Positions 19,043 through 28,500 are shown, counted from the whole stretch's first letter. The stretch is 55,989 nt of DNA, filler included, from Platydemus manokwari (GCA_037951405.1; 6 parts of 6 records of this genome joined end to end with filler, not necessarily neighbours in it), one strand, 5' to 3'. The notes: generated by a model not told the origin, from the sequence alone. Program-made: numbers and translations.

Positions 19043-19299
19043 AATTTTGTTTTGTTTGTGTTTTGTTTTTTTTGTTTAGCGAAAAAACCGGAAAGGAATT
19101 ACCGACACACCTGGTATATTGAATAAAACAATGAAATACATTTGAAAATACAGTCGGAATTGTTTTTTTTTCATTTATTTATTCTTCGTCTACTATTTTT
19201 AAATATATTGATAATTTTTGCTTCCACCAAAAAATAGCTATTGTTTTTGTTCATGACTGAAATTGTAAGTTGGTTTATAATGGTTCACTTAATTAAAAG

Positions 19300-20320
19300 A
19301 TTATCTAAATTGATCGCATTCACTTTTAACTTTAATAGGTGCGAATCTTTAAAGAACTAAAAAAACTTTTTAAACTTCAAAATCGGAATTGTGAAGTCAG
19401 GATAATATAAGCTAAATATAAATGAATAGCAATAAGTTATAAGCTGTAATAAGTTTCATTAGATAATGTTCTAATTAGCAATAACATTTTAAATATCTTG
19501 AAAATTTGGATAATTTGTTGTTTATATTCATGATGATTATATCCAATTTTATCAATTCGAATAAAATCAGAAAATACGTTTTATCTTTATTTGTTAATGT
19601 ACAGCTTCAATTTGTATGTTTTTAATTGAATGAAAATCTTTGATGGTAAAAAACAAGTGTATAGTTTGTTGCGGATGTAATAATGTGGAAAATAAGAGAA
19701 CGAATCAGTAATTAGATAATGTACTTATGTTAATGGATATTTAAATTGGTTAAATAAATCGTATTTGAGTATTTCTCAATTAAATAGCTACAGAAATTTG
19801 AAAGTTAAGCATTTATAAGGTCCTTTTCAGTATTAAGATGATCAATATTTAGATCAAGTGGTAAGATTAAACTCTAGAAAAGCTACAAAGCATGAAATTT
19901 CTGTATCAGATTCTGAAAATATTAAATATCTAAATGTAATTGAGAAGATAGACACTTTATCTAAGAAAATTGTCAAATCTTTAATTATTTCTGCTGGAAT
20001 CCATTTTTTATTGTAAATATAGGAGTCAGTGTTAGACCACTACAAATATCCTTATTTAAAATTGGAGTTGGAGTCAAGTAAGTTTTTAACACCTTCAAAC
20101 TCCTGATGTATTGACCTATCCTACTGACATAAATCTATAATTTTATTTGTAATTTTGGGAATCAAAACATTGGATAGAAATTGAGCACACTCCGCATTTA
20201 CGAGCCATCGTCTGTAAATGTCACGACAGAGTATATTTCCAGTAGAAGCTAGAGGAAAACTGTGGTTTGTTGGTATTGACACTATGAAGGTGCCGATTAG
20301 CACTTGTAATTTAGTTAATA
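19300..20320 (-). mobile_element. Possible hAT transposase relic
   Basis: FP..STGNI, TFTDDGS*M, IQCF and C-terminal LAYIILT...KSFFSSLKI occur in hAT order (HTG.NI, VTDNA.NM, CxxH, ER.FS dimerisation domain). Confidence 0.38.
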
Positions 20321-20629
20321 AATATTTGTATCAAACTTAATTTCATTTCCCAACACATCAAGTTATTAAAATAATCTTACAATTAGAGTTTTATCAAAAA
20401 CATTTTCATAGTTTTATACTAGCATTAAACATAATTATCAAAATAAAATAATAATTTAAACATGAATTATAAATAACAATATGGGTTTTATATCAAATCA
20501 AATTAAAATGGAACAATTGGTTTAATAATAATTCAATCTCATAAGATAAATGCTTTCTAACTTTATATGCATTGTTACTACCTGTTATGTAAAAATTCAT
20601 TCACCGAAATTTTAAAATTAGCTATAAAA

Positions 20630-21650
20630 TCTTTTTTATTGAGGTTTTTGAATTAATATGGTTTCTGATTACATCGTTAGCAGTTTCAAAAACTAGCCCA
20701 ACACAGATTCGTTCAACTTGTGCGCTATAAACCATTAAGAAAATGGATTGATCAAAACAATTTATTGCATCCATTACAAAAAAGCCTTGGCCCAACAGCC
20801 GGATGAATTGAACAAAACCTAACTCTAAAAATGATTCAAGAGTGATATCGTGATAAAAAGTAAACAAATCTCCGCATTGGCTTTCTTGACATTAAAGAAG
20901 CTTTTATTTTCTTAAGTATCGATGCTATGTTAGCAGTCCTAAAAAGAATGTGTGTGTCTAAAAAAGCCACTACAATAATTAACGCTATATACGCAAACTT
21001 TAGTACTTCCTTATATAGCAAATGCATCGCAAATCTGATAAACATAAAAAGAGACGTACAGCAAAGATGCCCAAATTAATTCCTTTTATTTAATATTGCA
21101 ATTAATCTACTAATAATTAAAATGGACTTTTGTCCGAGTAAATTATTAGTACAAGAAAATCACAAAATCTCATGTCTAGCAAATGCCGATGACATTGTAA
21201 TAGTTGATTAGAATGGAAATGGATTTCAATAACAAATAGACAGTGCATGCTTGCTCAGGAAACAAATAGGATTCAAGTTCAAGCCATCTAAATGCGCTCA
21301 CCTATTAAATAAAGGCTTAAACAAAAGACATGCTAAAGACTTTACTATGTACGGAATGACTAAATCAGAACTATCAATAAAATGCAATTATTGATATTTT
21401 GGAGTTAACTTTTCGCTGAAACATTACAGCTCAATAGAGAGTATTTGTACCACCGAGTCGATCTAAACGGAAAAATTAGAGAAAAGTATTATTTTATTTT
21501 GGTAGAAATTAGATACGTGTAATGTCTTTATTCATAGCAAGACTACATTCTTTGTCAAGAACTACTATGTATCATTTAGAAAAAATGAATCAATCATCTA
21601 TAAGTTTTATTTTATAAGGCCATACAGATGCCTTTCAAACGTTAAGAATG
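20630..21650 (+). mobile_element. Non-LTR retrotransposon RT relic (R2/NeSL/Utopia-like)
   Basis: KWIDQNNLLHPLQK, GFLDIKEAF, IKRDVQQRCP..LLFNIAI, ISCLANADDIV and IGFKFKPSKCA occur in RT domain order, interrupted by stops. Confidence 0.8.
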
Positions 21651-22630
21651 TTATTGTTAATCATTCAAGATATTTCATCAATCCAAGAAAACGAAAAATT
21701 CAAAAGTATAGTAGCGAAAAATAATTAATTCACATTATTCTGATTTAAAATTAAATTTTTAATAAAATACTTTCACTTGAAATATACGAAAAATAGCTAA
21801 GACCTCATTTCTTAACTTAAGCCATTATTTGTAACGAATCATTTGATTGAGAGTGAAAGAATGAAAAACTTATCTGTAACAAAGTTCGGCCTCATTTGAA
21901 AATATTCCAGTGATCGTAATATAAGTACAAATGCATGGTAATAATGGTGAAAAAATCAATTTCCTCTATTTGGCGTTTATGAAAAAAATGTTTTAAAACA
22001 GATTAAATTCGTTCCTGGGCTTTCACGTCTAATTTACAAGAAATGTGACTAAATTGATTAGAATAACAAAGGTTATCTTTAACTTATCGGAAATTAGCTT
22101 TCATTAATAATTTGAGCGGTCTCTCAACAAAATGAAGACAAATCATACATAATTATAATTAAACCATTGAAAAGGTTTCTTAATGCTTTCTATTCATGAG
22201 TTTCGGAAAGGATATCAAATCCACCACTGCATGATTTTTTTCTTACAGTTTTTTCAAATCAATCTGGTCAGCAATTTAAGACTAGTCTCGAAATCGAAAA
22301 ATATACCATCTGCGATTGCTCGCGTCTACAGAAAATGACTCAATTTGCGGACAATATGATATCATCAATGTACAATCCAAAAATCAACAAAACCTGTACG
22401 ATAGTACTTCTATTAATGTGTTACTAGCTTATCAAGATGCACCAATTATGAAACCACCATATAAATCCATTTGTCTAAATATATTGAATTTGCTTCACAA
22501 TAATAATGTCGTTGTCTTAATTATGTTGTTGTTATTGGTTGTGTTTCAGCAACTATATTTACTCTTCTTTTGTTGAACCAGCAACATTTCATATTGAATT
22601 GAAATTAAGCGAAATTCAGAATAATCCTAA

Positions 22631-25600
22631 ATGATTGCTCTGGAAGATGTAAACTACTTTATGATGATTTTATTTTTTATTATTTATTAATAAAATTCTA
22701 GAAAGGGGTTGAGAAACCGTCTGAGAAACATAAAAAGAATAAGAAGAAAGGAGAGAAGGACGAAAATCATCTGAAAAAAGAAATAGAGACTGACGATCAC
22801 ATAATTAGTTTAGAAGAACTATATATCAAACTGCAAACAGATCCAGATTCAGGTTTAACTCCGGATGAAGTGGAGTTGGCTTTATTGTTTCTTATTAATT
22901 GGTTTAAAATTTTACACAGAATTCGATTAGCACGAGATGGTATAAATGCGTTGACTCAAGTTAAAGGTACTCCAGAAATAGTGAAATTCATTAAAACCCT
23001 TGTGGGAGGTTTTTCTATTCTGCTATGGGTAGGTTCGATACTCTGCTTTATTGCTTATGGAATTCAAGCCGGAACTACTATAGATGCTCCAAAAGATAAT
23101 GTAATTGATTACTTCATATAGAAACAGTCATTAATGTTAAATAAAGTTGTATTTGGGAGTCGTTTTGGCATTCGTTGTCATATTTACTGGTTGCTTTTGT
23201 TACTATCAAGATTCAAAATCTTCTCAAATTATGAAATCATTCGGTAAAATGGTTCCTCAAGTATGTATTTATTAATTTCATTAAAATCACCCAATTTAAT
23301 CCTATTCTTTATGGCTGTTGTTAGTCTTGTCTTTTTAGAAAGCAATTGCTTGTCGTGGAGGAGTTTTACAAGAGGTCACTACCGAATCTTTGGTGAAAGG
23401 GGATATTGTGGAAATAAAGTTTGGTGATCGAGTACCTGCAGATGTACGAATGATAAAATCTAGTGGATTCAAAGTAGATGCATTACGTGTTTTATAAAAT
23501 GAAATAATGTCGAGAAAAGGTTGATAATTCAGCATTGACCGGTGAATCAGAACCACAAGCAAGAAATACGGAATGTTCTAGCAACAACATATTGGAAACA
23601 TCAAACATTGCCTTTTTCTCAACTAATGCCGTGGAAGGTAGAAAATATTTTGAATATCTTTAATGTTTTATTGAATATCTTCCATTCAGGTACATGCAGA
23701 GCCATTGTGATAAATACCGGGGATCATACCGTGATGGGTCGCATTGCTAATCTCACCAGCACCTTAACAATGGGAAAAACACCGATTGGCAAAGAAATTG
23801 AACACTTCATTCATATAATCAGCGCAATTGGTGTATCTCTTGGAATAATATTTTTTATAATTGCCTTTGCTATGGGATCGAAATGGTTAGAAGCGGTTTT
23901 ATTTCTGATTGGTGTAATTGTTGCAAATGTTCCTGAAGGCATGCTGGCAACTGTTACTGTGAGTCATAACTTGATGTTATCATCTATAAAATATTTTTCA
24001 AATCTTAATAGTACAAAACTATTTTTGAAACAAAAACTGTTGACGTGATATAATAAATATTATAAATTATAATATTCATCATATTCGATTAATATAATAG
24101 CATATCATTATAATTTAAAGGTTATGTTGACCTTAACTGCTAAGAAAATGGCAAGAAAAAATTGCTTGGTCAAAAACTTAGAAGCCGTTGAAACTCTTGG
24201 ATCCACCAGCATTATATGTTCGGACAAAACTGGAACACTAACTCAAAACGTAATGACTGTAGCTCACACTTGGTACGATAATAAAATCAATGACTGTCCG
24301 ACTTCAGAAAACCAAATGGGTTAGTAACAAAAATATCGAATTCATTAAAATCCCTACTTCACTGAAGGTTTGACCAACAAACAAAACAATGCAACTTGGG
24401 ATGTCTTAGTGCGAGTGGCTGTGTTGTGCAATCGAGCACAGTTCAAAGCAGGAGAAGAAGAAAAAGTTATATGGAAAAGAGAATGCACTGGTGATGCATC
24501 TGAGTCAGCTTTATTGAAATATGGTGAACTGTCCAAAGGTGGAATAACGAAGTATCGTGAAGAAAATCATAAAATAATCGAAATTCCATTTAATTCAACA
24601 AACAAATATCAAGTATATTTTCCCATAAAAAAAAATTGTTCTCATAGTTCTGTAGGTTTCAATACATGAAACCAATGATGGTGATCCTCGATATTTGCTA
24701 GTGATGAAAGGTGCTCCAGAGAGAATTCTGGAACGATGCTCTGTTATTCTAATAGATGGTCAAGAAATCGAAATTGATGATCACTGGATAAATGAATTTA
24801 ATCATGCATACATTGAGATGGGTGGAATGGGAGAACGGGTCCTAGGGTTCTGTGATTATCGGCTAGATGAAAAGGAATTTCCAAGGTTTATACATTGATA
24901 ATTCTCGAAAAATATTGCTATATATATACATATATTAATTGCATTATCTTCAGGGGTTACCCTTTCAATGCAGAAGAAATTAACTTTCCAATAAAAGGCT
25001 TTCGATTTGTTGGATTAATTTCAATGATAGATCCTCCTCGACCAACAGTACCGGATGCTGTTGCAAAATGTCGTTGCGCTGGAATAAAAGTCATTATGGT
25101 AACAGGAGACCATCCAATTACTGCTAAAGCGATATCGAGATCAGTAGGGATAATAAGTATGGATAATAAGACGGTGGAAGATATCGCTCTTGAAAGAGGA
25201 GTTTTACCAGCAGATGTTAGATTTTTTAAAAATTTTCAATACATGTATACTCCTAACAGATAAATCCGAGAGAAGCTAAAGCCTGTGTGATTCATGGATC
25301 AGATTTAAAGGAACTAACTCCTGACCAATTAGATGAAATTTTAAAATATCACGATGAAATTGTATTTGCAAGAACAAGTCCGCAGCAAAAATTACAAATT
25401 GTTGAGGGATGTCAAAGACAAGGAGCTATAGTTGCTGTAACTGGAGACGGTGTCAATGACAGTCCTGCATTGAAAAAAGCTGATATCGGTAGGTATTTAT
25501 ATTTTCTTTTCTTGAATATTCCAAAATCGTTGGGAGAATTATTGATTAAAAATAAATACTGTTTTTCAAGCAATCTGGAGAAGTAAATTATTTTGTAGTT

Positions 25601-27491
25601 TCTGATTTCAGGAATTGCAATGGGAATTGCGGGAAGTGATGTTAGTAAACAAGCTGCTGATATGATCTTACTGGATGATAACTTTGCATCAATTGTTATT
25701 GGGATTGAACAAGGACGAAAAATATTTGATAATTTGAAGAAATCGATAATTTACATTCTTGTAAAAACAATTCCCGAAATTGTCCCATTTCTTGCCTATA
25801 CGTTGGTGAATATACCCTTAGCTCTTGGTACCATTACAATTCTCTGTATTGATTTGGGAACTGATATGGTAATTTGATTTTTAATGATTTAGTTTCACGA
25901 GACTCAATGGCATATTATATGTAACTTCAAAAACAAAATTTAAAATACCTTTTATTTGTGTTTAGTATTTTTATTTGAATAATTTACTTTTATCGTATTT
26001 TCAGTTATTATTTTTGTTTCCATTTTCGAAAGTAGCTTTTAAATATTAATAAATTATGCGGCAATTTTAAATTTGACTACTTTCATTATAATTAATTTTC
26101 GCTCATCAGATAATTTTATATATAATTGCTATGTTTGATTTATTCGTATAATTCAGTTAAAATCTCATTTTTGAAGATGTCTAATAGTGACAAAACATAG
26201 TTTTAAATCAAAGTTCCCATCCTAATCACAACACTACTATAAGATTATTTGAGTTTTTAAATTTGGATTTTTTAATTATAAATTGATTTTGTCGACTCCA
26301 GACATGTTTGATAATGCCATTGCTTATTTTATAAAATAATTGCAAAAATTGAGAATATCTCTCAATTTGCTTCTAATGTTAAAAAGGGGTCCTCGCTAAT
26401 TTTCAATAAATTGCAATTCGGCCTACTTTTCCATTGTTTCAAATAATCAAATTTTATGAGATTTTGAAGTTAATTAATTATTGATTTCAAACAACTAAAA
26501 TTGTTATTAAGTATTTTAATAAAAAATTCAAAATGTTTTTAAAGAATATAATTAAATAAACTATATCTAATTTTGCAATACACTCACCAAATTAAAAATT
26601 TTATTTTAGGACCTTTTTTAACTTTATTGTTATAATTTGAAATATCAAGTCGTTTCTCATTTCCAATTGTATTCTCTTATCACCAACGCATAAATACACA
26701 AATACGATGAATTTATGTAGATTTTATTTCCAAGAAATATATTTAATTTCCCAGAAATTTATTTAGATGCCAGCAATAGCGCTAGCTTACGAGGGAGCCG
26801 AATCAAATATAATGAGGCGAAAACCTAGAAACCCTGTTAAAGATAATCTGGTAACTACGAAACTTATCTCCTTGACACATGGTCAACTAGGCATAATACA
26901 AGCTACTGGCTCATTTTTTGCATATTTCGTTATCATGGCTGAAGAAGGTTTCTTGCCACTTCGATTAATCGGCATACGTTCGGATTGGGACAGTACAGGA
27001 ATAAATGATCTCAAAGATTCTTATGGACAAGAATGGGTAAGCAAAATATAATATTTACAAATATAATATATAACTTATAGACCTATAAACAAAGAAAGAC
27101 GTTAGAAACCACTTGTTACAGTGCATACTTTGTCTCGGTAATGATACAACAGTGGTTTAACATAATGCTCGTCAAAACTCGAAGAAACTCACTCTTTCAA
27201 CAAGGAATGTGGAATCACCAACTTACTTTCTCCATGTTTTTCGAAACAGGATTGGCGATTTTTATAATCTATTGTCCAGGAGTAAATGAAGTATTAAAGT
27301 TGTCACCTCTAAGGTAAAATTAAGGAAGTCATAAAGTATCGTAAAAATTGATTATCACAATTGTTTGTAGATTCTCGTGGTGGTTTATAGCGATTCCTTT
27401 TGGATTTTATCTTTTGATCTTTGATGAAATGCGTAAAATTATTTTACGTCGAAACAAGAAATCAATTTGGTTGGCTAGAGAAAATCCATAA
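22631..27491 (+). CDS. P2C-type (Na,K/H,K family) ATPase alpha subunit, 16 exons, ~1017 aa, atypical ion-binding sites
   Basis: Hand-spliced on GT-AG introns. Exons: 22631-22648, 22702-22874, 22920-23100, 23147-23260, 23339-23473, 23520-23637, 23690-23958, 24121-24319, 24368-24612, 24656-24885, 24954-25215, 25260-25488, 25612-25868, 26767-27036, 27081-27313, 27371-27491. Total 3054 nt, in frame, ending in TAA. Motifs: [73 protein letters not shown]. Exon 1 (18 nt) is the least certain. Confidence 0.97.
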
Positions 27492-27749
27492 TTGTGACTG
27501 TCATTATAAACGTTTAATAATCTGATGTTATAATTTTTAGACTATCATAATAATTACATTTGTTTTGTTTATTTAATTCTTTATTTTCTTAGTTTTTTAT
27601 TTATTATTTTCATTATTATTAGCAAGTTACATATTTAAAAAAGTAAGATGACAAAACAAGGCAACATCATGTCATAACTTTATTAATAAAAAATTCTGAA
27701 TATTTAAACAAATATCTCTAATATTATCTTACTTCCCTCTCACATTCTT

Positions 27750-28110
27750 TTTAACGTTTTTCTCAACTTCTCGTTTCGACAGTATTGAATTGTTAAATCC
27801 TTCTTTATTGATGATTACTGCTGATTTTATGCCTAACAAATTTAATAAAGCTGGGATGTGGCCTGCCTATCTTAGCCCATTGGTGTTACGTTAATCTTGT
27901 GAGTACATTTCATTCCCTTGATCATTCTCCTTACGATATTGGAAATCAAAATTAAATCCTGAAAATTTTTCAAACCATAAGGAGAACAAATCGGATTTTT
28001 GGTTTTCTCGAGTATATCGATGCTTTGTGATCAACGGCAGTTGCAAACTTTTACCAAGTAAATAATGCTTAAAATTGATGAGTTTAAGGGTCAATGGTTA
28101 TTTTATTTTA
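27750..28110 (-). mobile_element. Ty3/gypsy pol relic (RNase H C-terminus into integrase)
   Basis: FKHYLLGK...LWFEKFSGFNFDFQYRKENDQGN matches FRHYL.G..F / RW...L..F.F.I.YR.G..N. Confidence 0.7.
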
Positions 28111-28500
28111 TAAGGATTTTAACTCGTTTTATCAATATCCGAAACTAATAAGTTCTCTGAGTCCTTATGGCCCACAAGTAATCACTAAACCTCGACTGAC
28201 TCTAATCCATGTATGAAGACGATAAAGTGATGAGGAGATTTTGATGATGATAAAATTTACAGAAATGATTGTGAAACCTAATGTCACTTATCGATTCAAT
28301 ATTACAACAACCTTGTGTTTTATTATATGTTTATTACTATAACAGTAAATACAATTATACACCTAATAAAAATAATTCAAATACTAATATGCACTTAATA
28401 AAAATTAGATTTTAGAACTACATTTTGGATCTTCCAGCAAATGCCGGGCATAACAGGAACAATTGATCTTCTGCACCAGACGATCTTCTTGAGTGCGTCG

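What the first reader, a model, noticed from the sequence alone, without database searches (positions are those of the whole stretch)
25740..25800. M5 Lys at the Ser775 position (H,K-ATPase hallmark) plus N776T, T774V and T772I
Seen: AAA at 25764-25766 within an ungapped match, [16 protein letters not shown] versus NLKKSIAYTLTSNIPE. Known: the equivalent lysine in gastric (K791) and non-gastric H,K pumps acts as a built-in cation occupying site I. Artemia alpha2KK puts Lys one residue later (N776) and also at N324, which here stays Asn. Inference: a distinct route to a built-in cation, with a single K+ occluded.
Basis: partly seen in the sequence, partly recalled or inferred. Interest (0 to 1): 0.8.

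Follow-up and report, generated by a model that had tools for sequence, protein, structure and literature searches.

The report
Sodium-pump paralogue with built-in lysine
An intact, evolutionarily conserved sodium-pump-like gene of an unidentified small-intron invertebrate carries a lysine where sodium pumps bind a potassium ion and has also lost the third sodium site, so it probably works like a proton/potassium pump that arose independently of the vertebrate ones.

Summary
AAA at 25764-25766 encodes Lys at the pig alpha1 Ser775 position, which is Lys791 in the gastric H,K-ATPase. The alignment to solved pumps is ungapped, and T772I, T774V and N776T are also present.

The codon lies in exon 13 of an intact gene on the + strand. 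I found 15 coding exons at 22702-27491 and a probable first exon at 22631-22648. All introns are GT-AG and most are 43-78 nt. The catalytic motifs and the beta-subunit motif are all present.

The Lys is not a one-off. Five metagenome or SRA contigs form a well-supported clade with the window. Wherever the exon is present, they share K775, T776, Y847H, V922Q, A925F, D926N, E953F and loss of the C-terminal Tyr-Tyr. Synonymous sites are saturated.

So site I holds a tethered cation, and the Na+-specific site III is disabled by a route different from the H,K-ATPases. Site II is intact. My best reading is a convergent, electroneutral pump that exchanges one H+ or Na+ for one K+.

Transport, expression, structure and the organism remain untested or unknown. 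I rate it a new variant of a known kind, interest about 0.6.

The parts
22631..22648 (+). Probable first coding exon (MIALED), followed by a 53-nt GT-AG intron
   Evidence: This is the only ATG-plus-donor candidate at an intron distance typical of the gene. It is inferred, with no RNA support.
22702..27491 (+). Fifteen coding exons of a P2C ATPase alpha subunit (1011 aa plus stop): 22702-22874, 22920-23100, 23147-23260, 23339-23473, 23520-23637, 23690-23958, 24121-24319, 24368-24612, 24656-24885, 24954-25215, 25260-25488, 25612-25868, 26767-27036, 27081-27313, 27371-27491
   Evidence: The spliced frame is open and every intron is GT-AG, with lengths of 43-162 nt plus one of 898 nt. Pfam finds Cation_ATPase_N, E1-E2_ATPase, Cation_ATPase, Hydrolase and Cation_ATPase_C on the exons. 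PDB alignments confirm the exons.
25612..25868 (+). Exon 13, encoding M5 and M6
   Evidence: Ungapped 85-aa alignment to Na,K-ATPase alpha chains, E about 1e-37. There is no second copy of this exon in the piece.
25755..25769 (+). M5 codons I772, L773, V774, K775 and T776 (canonical T-L-T-S-N)
   Evidence: K and T are fixed in the clade, and positions 772 and 774 never carry a hydroxyl in clade members.
25764..25766 (+). AAA = Lys at the Ser775 position (gastric H,K-ATPase Lys791, non-gastric Lys794)
   Evidence: Codons in the relatives are AAA, AAA and AAG.
25776..25865 (+). Retained acidic ligands E779 (25776-78), D804 (25851-53) and D808 (25863-65)
23926..23937 (+). M4 NVPE: N324 and E327 retained
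   Evidence: Ungapped alignment to 2zxe; coordinates.
24223..24237 (+). DKTGT phosphorylation motif
26878..26880 (+). CAT = His at the Tyr847 position (M7), within the clade signature LTHGQ
   Evidence: Ungapped alignment; pig numbering 810-899 for query 1-90. Fixed in 4 of 4 clade sequences.
27147..27161 (+). M8 QQWFN: V922Q, Q923, W924, A925F and D926N (AAC at 27159-61)
   Evidence: Ungapped alignment to alpha3 897-973; N falls on alpha3 D923. Fixed in 4 of 4 clade sequences, as AAC or AAT.
27468..27491 (+). C-terminus ...WLARENP then stop: the canonical ...ETYY is absent and the tail is one residue shorter
   Evidence: Alignment to alpha3 ends at E1010, and two non-Tyr residues follow. L002 ends ...WFSREAA then stop. 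L005 ends ...WLARENP, and in L006 the aligned part ends ...WLVREH.
27019..27030 (+). SYGQ motif of the M7-M8 loop (beta-subunit contact)
   Evidence: The role of the motif is from established knowledge of Na,K-ATPase.

Best explanation
The Lys codon belongs to an intact, selectively maintained gene for a divergent Na,K-ATPase-type (P2C) alpha subunit. I call its lineage the KT clade. It arose from a canonical animal sodium pump, not from the vertebrate H,K-ATPases.

Shown here: the gene structure, the catalytic motifs, the alignment positions, the clade, and the conservation of the changed residues.

Inferred: the epsilon-amino group of Lys775 sits in cation site I as a tethered cation, paired with Asp804, Asp808 or Glu779, as Lys791 and Lys794 do in the gastric and non-gastric H,K-ATPases. 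N776T makes room for it. The Na+-specific site III is inactivated by D926N, with support from T774V/I, Y847H, V922Q, A925F, E953F and loss of the C-terminal Tyr-Tyr cap. Only site II (M4 carbonyls, E327, E779, D804) stays canonical.

The predicted cycle exports one cation (H+ or Na+) and imports one K+ per ATP. It would be electroneutral and able to work against a steeper gradient than a 3:2 pump.
For: The gene is intact, with 15-16 GT-AG exons, and DKTGT, TGES, TGDGVND and SYGQ are present. Pfam domains cover the exons.

Alignments to solved pumps are ungapped. They place K on S775/K791, N on D926 (alpha3 D923) and H on Y847, and show that the tail lacks YY.

The clade has 100/100 support on the M5-M10 tree and 86/86 on the exon 9-13 tree. 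It is nested with beetle, pseudoscorpion and rotifer pumps, and the algal and protist pumps lie outside.

K775, T776, H847, Q922, F925, N926, F953 and the missing YY are fixed in every member that covers the site, with synonymous codon variation. Third codon positions differ at 48-57% while amino-acid identity is 71-95%.

From the literature: Lys791 with Glu820 sterically excludes K+ from site I and gives one K+ per cycle (PMC6706254). Non-gastric Lys794 is a tethered cation, and neutralising Asp945 (NKA D926) abolishes site III. Alpha3 D923N lowers Na+ affinity more than 100-fold without changing K+ affinity. The C-terminal tyrosines cap the network that reaches site III. The authors predict that strict H+ selectivity needs loss of both site I and site III (PMC9463140).
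Against: There is no functional, structural or expression evidence. No RNA run holds the sequence, and no model could be built.

The salt-bridge partner is Asp804, not the longer Glu820 of the gastric pump, so the Lys geometry may differ. In alpha2KK a neighbouring Lys goes towards site II, and a TM4 Lys points away from the cavity (PMC10756188).

Trp924, Gln923, Tyr771 and Glu954 of the site III network are retained, so some Na+ interaction may persist.

Only the C-terminal third of the relatives was recovered. Exon 13 and exon 15 lie on the same molecule only in the window and in L002.
Confidence: 0.6

Rival explanations
1. It is a working Na+/K+ pump with only partly reduced stoichiometry, for example 2Na+:1K+ as in Artemia alpha2KK. 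The Lys replaces one ion, but Na+ is still the exported species and transport remains electrogenic.
For: Every exon scores higher against Na,K-ATPases than against H,K-ATPases: 131 vs 113/112 bits, 84 vs 46/45, and 123 vs 94/85. W924, Q923, Y771, E954, P778 and N324 are canonical. Alpha2KK shows that a Lys-bearing pump can stay Na+-dependent.
Against: D926N alone lowers Na+ affinity at site III more than 100-fold in alpha3. The clade also lacks the C-terminal YY and the T774 hydroxyl. With site I occupied and site III disabled, only one site is left for Na+.
Confidence: 0.2
2. The protein has lost coupled ion pumping. It serves as a scaffold, receptor or regulator, or as an uncoupled or leaky ATPase, and the Lys simply satisfies the counter-ion requirement so that dephosphorylation needs no K+.
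For: Built-in counter-ions that allow spontaneous dephosphorylation are described for other P-type subfamilies (PMC10654040). In a canonical background, S772R and D923N of ATP1A3 are disease variants (PMC4026576). There are many second-shell changes.
Against: All catalytic motifs, site II ligands and the beta-subunit motif are conserved under strong purifying selection. This fits a working pump better than a scaffold.
Confidence: 0.12
3. It is a pseudogene, an assembly error or a chance substitution with no meaning.
For: No RNA evidence was available. Intron 13 carries a very high-copy repeat.
Against: The 1011-codon frame is open across 15 exons with canonical splice sites. Independent contigs of run X1 agree over the codon. 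The same residues are fixed in five contigs from two other data sets, with saturated synonymous divergence.
Confidence: 0.03

Closest known systems
Non-gastric H,K-ATPase alpha (ATP12A), Lys794
   Same: Lys at the Ser775 position together with Asp at the D804 position and Asn at the N324 position. Site III is made unavailable by neutralising the D926-equivalent carboxylate. ATP12A's transport is electroneutral 1H+:1K+ (PMC9463140).
   Different: The window is not an orthologue, since every exon scores higher against Na,K-ATPases. ATP12A neutralises Asp945 through Arg949 and lacks Trp (it has Ile943) and Pro (it has Ala797). The window keeps P778 and W924, has V930, and replaces the Asp itself (D926N). 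The window also has N776T and Y847H and lacks the C-terminal YY.
Gastric H,K-ATPase alpha (ATP4A), Lys791
   Same: Lys at the same M5 position. In ATP4A it blocks site I and leaves a single K+ at site II (PMC6706254).
   Different: The gastric pump pairs the Lys with Glu820 and has Tyr340 and Glu936. The window keeps Asp804 and Asn324 and has Met at position 920. The D942-R946 salt bridge is replaced by D926N.
Artemia/Daphnia Na,K-ATPase alpha2KK
   Same: An invertebrate sodium-pump paralogue with a tethered Lys in M5 and reduced stoichiometry (PMC10756188).
   Different: The alpha2KK lysines are at N776 and N324. The window has Thr at 776 and Asn at 324, with its Lys one residue earlier. As far as I recall (not checked here), alpha2KK keeps D926 and remains a Na+ pump.
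Human ATP1A3 variants S772R and D923N; engineered NKA C930R
   Same: These put a positive charge at the same M5 position and neutralise the same M8 aspartate. C930R makes the Na,K pump electroneutral.
   Different: These are single changes in a canonical background, pathogenic or engineered. In the window the changes are combined with compensating substitutions and kept by selection.
Other uncharacterised P2C variants seen in the searches
   Same: Lys or His at or next to the same M5 position: YTFTKNLVE fragments (P0111 and relatives), THT (P0154/L004), YILSHAAPE with D926N (P0149), and the bdelloid rotifer Didymodactylos carnosus N776K paralogue with D926 replaced (P0081).
   Different: They have different residue combinations. 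P0149 and P0081 fall outside the KT clade on the tree, the place of THT/L004 is unresolved, and the P0111-type fragments were not placed. None carries the K-T pair with QQWFN.

Membership tests
P2C P-type ATPase alpha subunit (Na,K/H,K type) | DKTGT phosphorylation site, TGES, TGDGVND and the Pfam domain set | tested here: met
   The motifs are present in the spliced model. Pfam finds Cation_ATPase_N, E1-E2_ATPase, Cation_ATPase, Hydrolase and Cation_ATPase_C.
P2C P-type ATPase alpha subunit (Na,K/H,K type) | The closest solved relatives are Na,K/H,K alpha chains over M3-M10 | tested here: met
   E from 1e-38 to 1e-21 against Na,K alpha chains. SERCA and SPCA score far lower.
P2C P-type ATPase alpha subunit (Na,K/H,K type) | SYGQ beta-subunit contact motif in the M7-M8 loop | tested here: met
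   DSYGQEW at 27016-27036.
Canonical 3Na+/2K+ Na,K-ATPase | Site I ligands Ser775 and Asn776 | tested here: not met
   They are Lys and Thr.
Canonical 3Na+/2K+ Na,K-ATPase | Site III: Asp926, with Thr774, Tyr771, Gln923 and the Trp924/Glu954 network | tested here: not met
   D926N and T774V are present. Y771, Q923, W924 and E954 are retained.
Canonical 3Na+/2K+ Na,K-ATPase | C-terminal Tyr-Tyr | tested here: not met
   The protein ends ...WLARENP. The YY is also absent in L002 and L005, and L006 shows no YY in the part aligned.
Canonical 3Na+/2K+ Na,K-ATPase | Site II ligands Glu327, Glu779 and Asp804 | tested here: met
Vertebrate H,K-ATPases (ATP4A, ATP12A) | Lys at the Ser775-equivalent position | tested here: met
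Vertebrate H,K-ATPases (ATP4A, ATP12A) | Orthology with ATP4A or ATP12A | tested here: not met
   Every exon scores higher against Na,K than against H,K chains. The clade nests among invertebrate Na,K pumps. No vertebrate H,K sequence was in the tree, so this rests on the scores.
Vertebrate H,K-ATPases (ATP4A, ATP12A) | Gastric Glu820, Tyr340 and Glu936; non-gastric Ala797, Ile943 and Arg949 | tested here: not met
   The window has D804, N324, M920, P778, W924 and V930. The residue equivalences come from PMC6706254 and PMC9463140.
Vertebrate H,K-ATPases (ATP4A, ATP12A) | Electroneutral 1H+:1K+ transport | not testable with these tools
   This needs expression and electrophysiology.
Branchiopod alpha2KK pumps | Lys at N324 and at N776 | tested here: not met
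   The window has Asn at 324 and Thr at 776.

The most novel reading that the evidence does not exclude
An invertebrate lineage independently converted a sodium pump into an electroneutral H+/K+ (or 1Na+/1K+) pump. It did so with a tethered Lys at Ser775 plus direct neutralisation of Asp926. This would be a natural test of the published prediction that proton selectivity needs loss of both site I and site III. It would also be a candidate molecular basis for H,K-ATPase-like activities reported in invertebrates.
Probability: 0.3. Interest if true: 0.8.

Novelty: new variant of a known kind. Interest (0 to 1): 0.62.

Why it matters
Tethered-lysine P2C pumps are known from vertebrate H,K-ATPases and from brine-shrimp alpha2KK. 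This clade reaches a similar binding-site logic from a sodium-pump ancestor with a different set of substitutions (S775K + N776T + Y847H + D926N, and no C-terminal YY).

It therefore offers a natural, selection-tested combination for asking which residues set ion number and H+/Na+ selectivity. Young et al. 2022 left exactly this question open.

In a canonical pump, a positive charge at this M5 position (S772R) and the same D-to-N change (D923N) are human disease variants of ATP1A3. The compensating changes here could show how a pump tolerates them.

If the pump is H+/K+, it would also give invertebrate physiology a candidate gene for SCH28080-type H,K-ATPase effects, which are described in planarians and sea urchins in PMC4895326. 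No link to those animals is shown here.

Tried and rejected
- **Expression.** Only one DNA run, with coded names, holds the stretch, and no RNA run does. Splicing and expression are therefore unverified.
- **Full-length relatives.** The spliced protein has no reference. I tried to build a full-length query by aligning the exon pieces onto a scaffold protein, but MAFFT scattered the pieces, so I abandoned it. All homology searches were then exon-sized and found fragments only.
- **Representative search.** With exon 13 as query, none of the 150 best hits carried the K-T motif.
- **Exon searches.** Exon 15 found no candidate at all. Exon 14 found 12.
- **DNA pattern.** A degenerate pattern for FDNLKKxxxYxxxKTIPE found nothing in JGI metagenome contigs.
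- **ESM Atlas.** The search gave no useful taxonomy.
- **Non-coding and upstream checks.** Rfam and tRNA scans of the piece were empty. Pfam on the upstream ORFs gave only sub-threshold noise, so the RT-like motif at 21080-21208 is unsupported.
- **Organism.** It was not identified. The D. carnosus (bdelloid rotifer) paralogue and a canonical gene on L008 have different intron structures, so neither helped. Accession numbers of the metagenomes were not found in the literature.
- **Literature.** Searches found no description of a K-T or QQWFN pump. Beane et al. 2011 is not held.
- **dN/dS.** It could not be computed as a ratio because dS is saturated. I give raw codon-position differences instead.
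- **THT variant.** The relation of L004 to the clade is unresolved.
- **Vertebrate-like fragments.** P0136 and P0142 look like vertebrate gastric H,K-ATPase and are of unknown origin. P0136 was printed once, for inspection only. I left both out of every comparison, tree and further search.
- **Structure.** No prediction was run, because the spliced protein would have had to be typed in.

Full report
**Observation**

The + strand at 25731-25778 encodes [16 protein letters not shown], and AAA at 25764-25766 is the Lys. The exon (window:25614-25868) aligns without gaps over all 85 residues to solved alpha chains. These are pig alpha1 3b8e 707-791, human alpha3 722-806, gastric H,K-ATPase 5ylu 742-825 and Artemia alpha2KK 8k1l 707-791.

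Query residue 51 therefore falls on alpha1 Ser775 and alpha3 Ser772. It falls on chain index 792 of the gastric pump, which is the literature's Lys791 once the initiator Met is removed. It lies one residue before alpha2KK Lys758.

The M4 motif is VANVPEG, so N324 and E327 are canonical. The contigs of the only public run that holds this DNA are identical over 22696-26115. That run may be the source of the assembly.

**Gene**

The codon lies in exon 13 of a gene on the + strand. Fifteen coding exons between 22702 and 27491 join into an open frame of 1011 codons. Every intron is GT-AG. The intron lengths are 45, 46, 78, 46, 52, 162, 48, 43, 68, 44, 123, 898, 44 and 57 nt.

A first exon at 22631-22648 (MIALED, followed by a 53-nt intron) is the only plausible start. 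It is an inference.

The Pfam domains of a cation P-type ATPase are found on the exons. DKTGT, TGESEP, TGDGVND and the SYGQ loop are present. The piece holds no second copy of exon 13 that could serve as a mutually exclusive exon. No RNA run holds the sequence, so splicing and expression are unverified.

**Further departures from a sodium pump**

All of these were read from ungapped PDB alignments:
- M8 reads [11 protein letters not shown] against VVVQWADLIIC. This gives V922Q, A925F and D926N, with N falling on alpha3 D923.
- M7 reads LISLTHGQ against LISMAYGQ, which is Y847H.
- M9 reads FFETG against FEETA, which is E953F with E954 kept.
- The C-terminus is ...[14 protein letters not shown], against ...RRNPGGWVEKETYY in alpha3. 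It lacks the terminal Tyr-Tyr and its tail is one residue shorter.

Y771, P778, E779, D804, D808, Q923, W924 and E954 are retained.

**Relatives**

A representative search with exon 13 returned no K-T motif among its 150 best hits. The word search at 90% clustering found exon-sized fragments that do carry it:
- P0151 (95% identical, [11 protein letters not shown])
- P0233 (VIYNFIKTIPE)
- P0238 (IIYNFVKTIPE)

Exon 14 found P0246 (86%) and P0250. Their contigs come from ENA assembly ERZ27256860 (L001, L003) and from run SRR33002330 (L002, L005, L006).

L002 carries exons 13-16 on one contig and has K775, T776, QQWFN, LTHGQ and the ending ...WFSREAA-stop. L005 and L006 carry exons 14-16 with LTHGQ and QQWFN. 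L005 ends ...WLARENP, and in L006 the aligned part ends ...WLVREH.

Every member that covers a site has K775, T776, H847, Q922, F925, N926 and F953. No member has a hydroxyl residue at 772 or 774. Codons vary synonymously at these sites: AAA/AAG, ACA/ACT/ACC, CAT/CAC and AAC/AAT.

Third codon positions differ at 48-57%, while amino-acid identity is 71-95%. Synonymous distance is beyond correction. This indicates strong purifying selection on the unusual residues.

On an M5-M10 maximum-likelihood tree the four sequences form one group with 100/100 support and a long stem. The group splits into two subclades, window + L005 and L002 + L006. It lies inside a 99/97 group that holds a beetle, a pseudoscorpion and a bdelloid-rotifer pump and a canonical sequence. 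Algal and protist pumps lie outside. A second tree on exons 9-13 keeps the K-T sequences together at 86/86.

Every exon scores higher against Na,K-ATPases than against H,K-ATPases. The Lys is therefore convergent with the vertebrate H,K pumps.

**Mechanism (inferred)**

In the gastric pump, Lys791 with its partner Glu820 fills the space of site I, and a single K+ binds at site II (PMC6706254). In the non-gastric pump, Lys794 is a tethered cation. Its D804-equivalent is still Asp, as in the window. Site III is unavailable there because Asp945 (NKA D926) is neutralised by Arg949 and Trp924 is replaced by Ile.

Alpha3 D923N lowers Na+ affinity more than 100-fold without affecting K+. NKA C930R makes the sodium pump electroneutral. 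The C-terminal tyrosines cap the hydrogen-bond network that reaches site III. The authors predict that strict H+ selectivity needs simultaneous loss of site I, through the tethered Lys, and of site III (PMC9463140).

The KT clade has both losses, reached differently. P778, W924 and V930 stay sodium-pump-like.

I therefore expect one exported cation (H+ or Na+) and one imported K+ per cycle, which would be electroneutral. Which ion is exported cannot be decided from sequence. The roles I give to N776T, Y847H, V922Q, A925F and E953F (making room for the Lys and repacking around it) are guesses.

**Rivals**

- A 2Na+:1K+ electrogenic pump of the alpha2KK kind. D926N and the lost YY argue against it.
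- A non-pumping or uncoupled protein. The conserved catalytic core and site II argue against it.
- A pseudogene or assembly error. The open frame, the agreeing contigs and the clade contradict it.

**Comparison and novelty**

[quoted passage not shown] In descent the gene is a sodium-pump paralogue. It fails the defining features of a canonical 3:2 pump, of ATP4A and ATP12A, and of alpha2KK (see the membership table).

Other uncharacterised variants turned up at the same spot. These are YTFTKNLVE fragments, a THT variant (L004), YILSHAAPE with D926N (P0149), and a Didymodactylos carnosus N776K paralogue that has also lost D926 (P0081). A charged or titratable residue in M5 often travels with loss of D926. 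So the theme recurs, and this is a new variant of a known kind, not a new kind.

Literature searches found no description of the K-T/QQWFN combination.

**Limits**

- The organism is unknown. The piece is about 30% GC, and the modal intron length is about 45 nt.
- Only the C-terminal third of the relatives was recovered.
- No structure prediction was possible, because the spliced protein has no reference to hand to the fold tool.
- Two fragments that look like vertebrate gastric H,K-ATPase (P0136, P0142) were left out of all comparisons.

Noticed in passing
window 26107-26607 (inside intron 13, 25869-26766): In run X1 this roughly 500-nt stretch has summed contig depth of about 2e5, against about 13 for the flanking exons. 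There are many variant contigs and joints. It is therefore a very high-copy dispersed repeat, and it explains why this intron is 898 nt when the others are 43-162 nt. No clear terminal inverted repeats were found.
   Followed up: partly
L004 (ENA ERZ19571839), 1084-1716: A related metagenomic pump has His at the Ser775 position and Thr at Asn776 (LYTLTHTIPE), with fewer introns. Its relation to the K-T clade is unresolved, and its M8 is not on the contig.
   Followed up: partly
P0081 / L007 (Didymodactylos carnosus, GCA_905249995.1): A bdelloid-rotifer paralogue has Lys at Asn776 (YTLSSKIPE, the alpha2KK type). Its M8 reads QWTV, where canonical pumps read QWAD, so D926 is lost. The predicted tail has no YY, though the gene model may be imperfect.
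   Followed up: partly
P0111, P0119, P0120, P0128 (fragments; P0111 on an 18-kb contig): Another lineage has Lys at the Ser775 position in the context YTFTKNLVELLP, with Val in place of Pro778, and GTDIVPSI after M6. The origin is unknown. This may be a further independent tethered-Lys pump.
   Followed up: no
P0149 (635 aa, Logan): A divergent pump has His at the Ser775 position (YILSHAAPE) together with D926N (QWAN). Across several lineages, a charged or titratable M5 residue co-occurs with loss of D926.
   Followed up: no
L002, L005, L006 (all from SRR33002330): One sequencing run holds three different members of the K-T clade, from two subclades. Either one organism has several paralogues or the sample holds several related species.
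   Followed up: no
window 19043-22600 and 27600-28500: No gene, tRNA or Rfam family was found. A short motif reminiscent of reverse transcriptase (NADDIVIVD, 21080-21208) got no Pfam support.
   Followed up: partly
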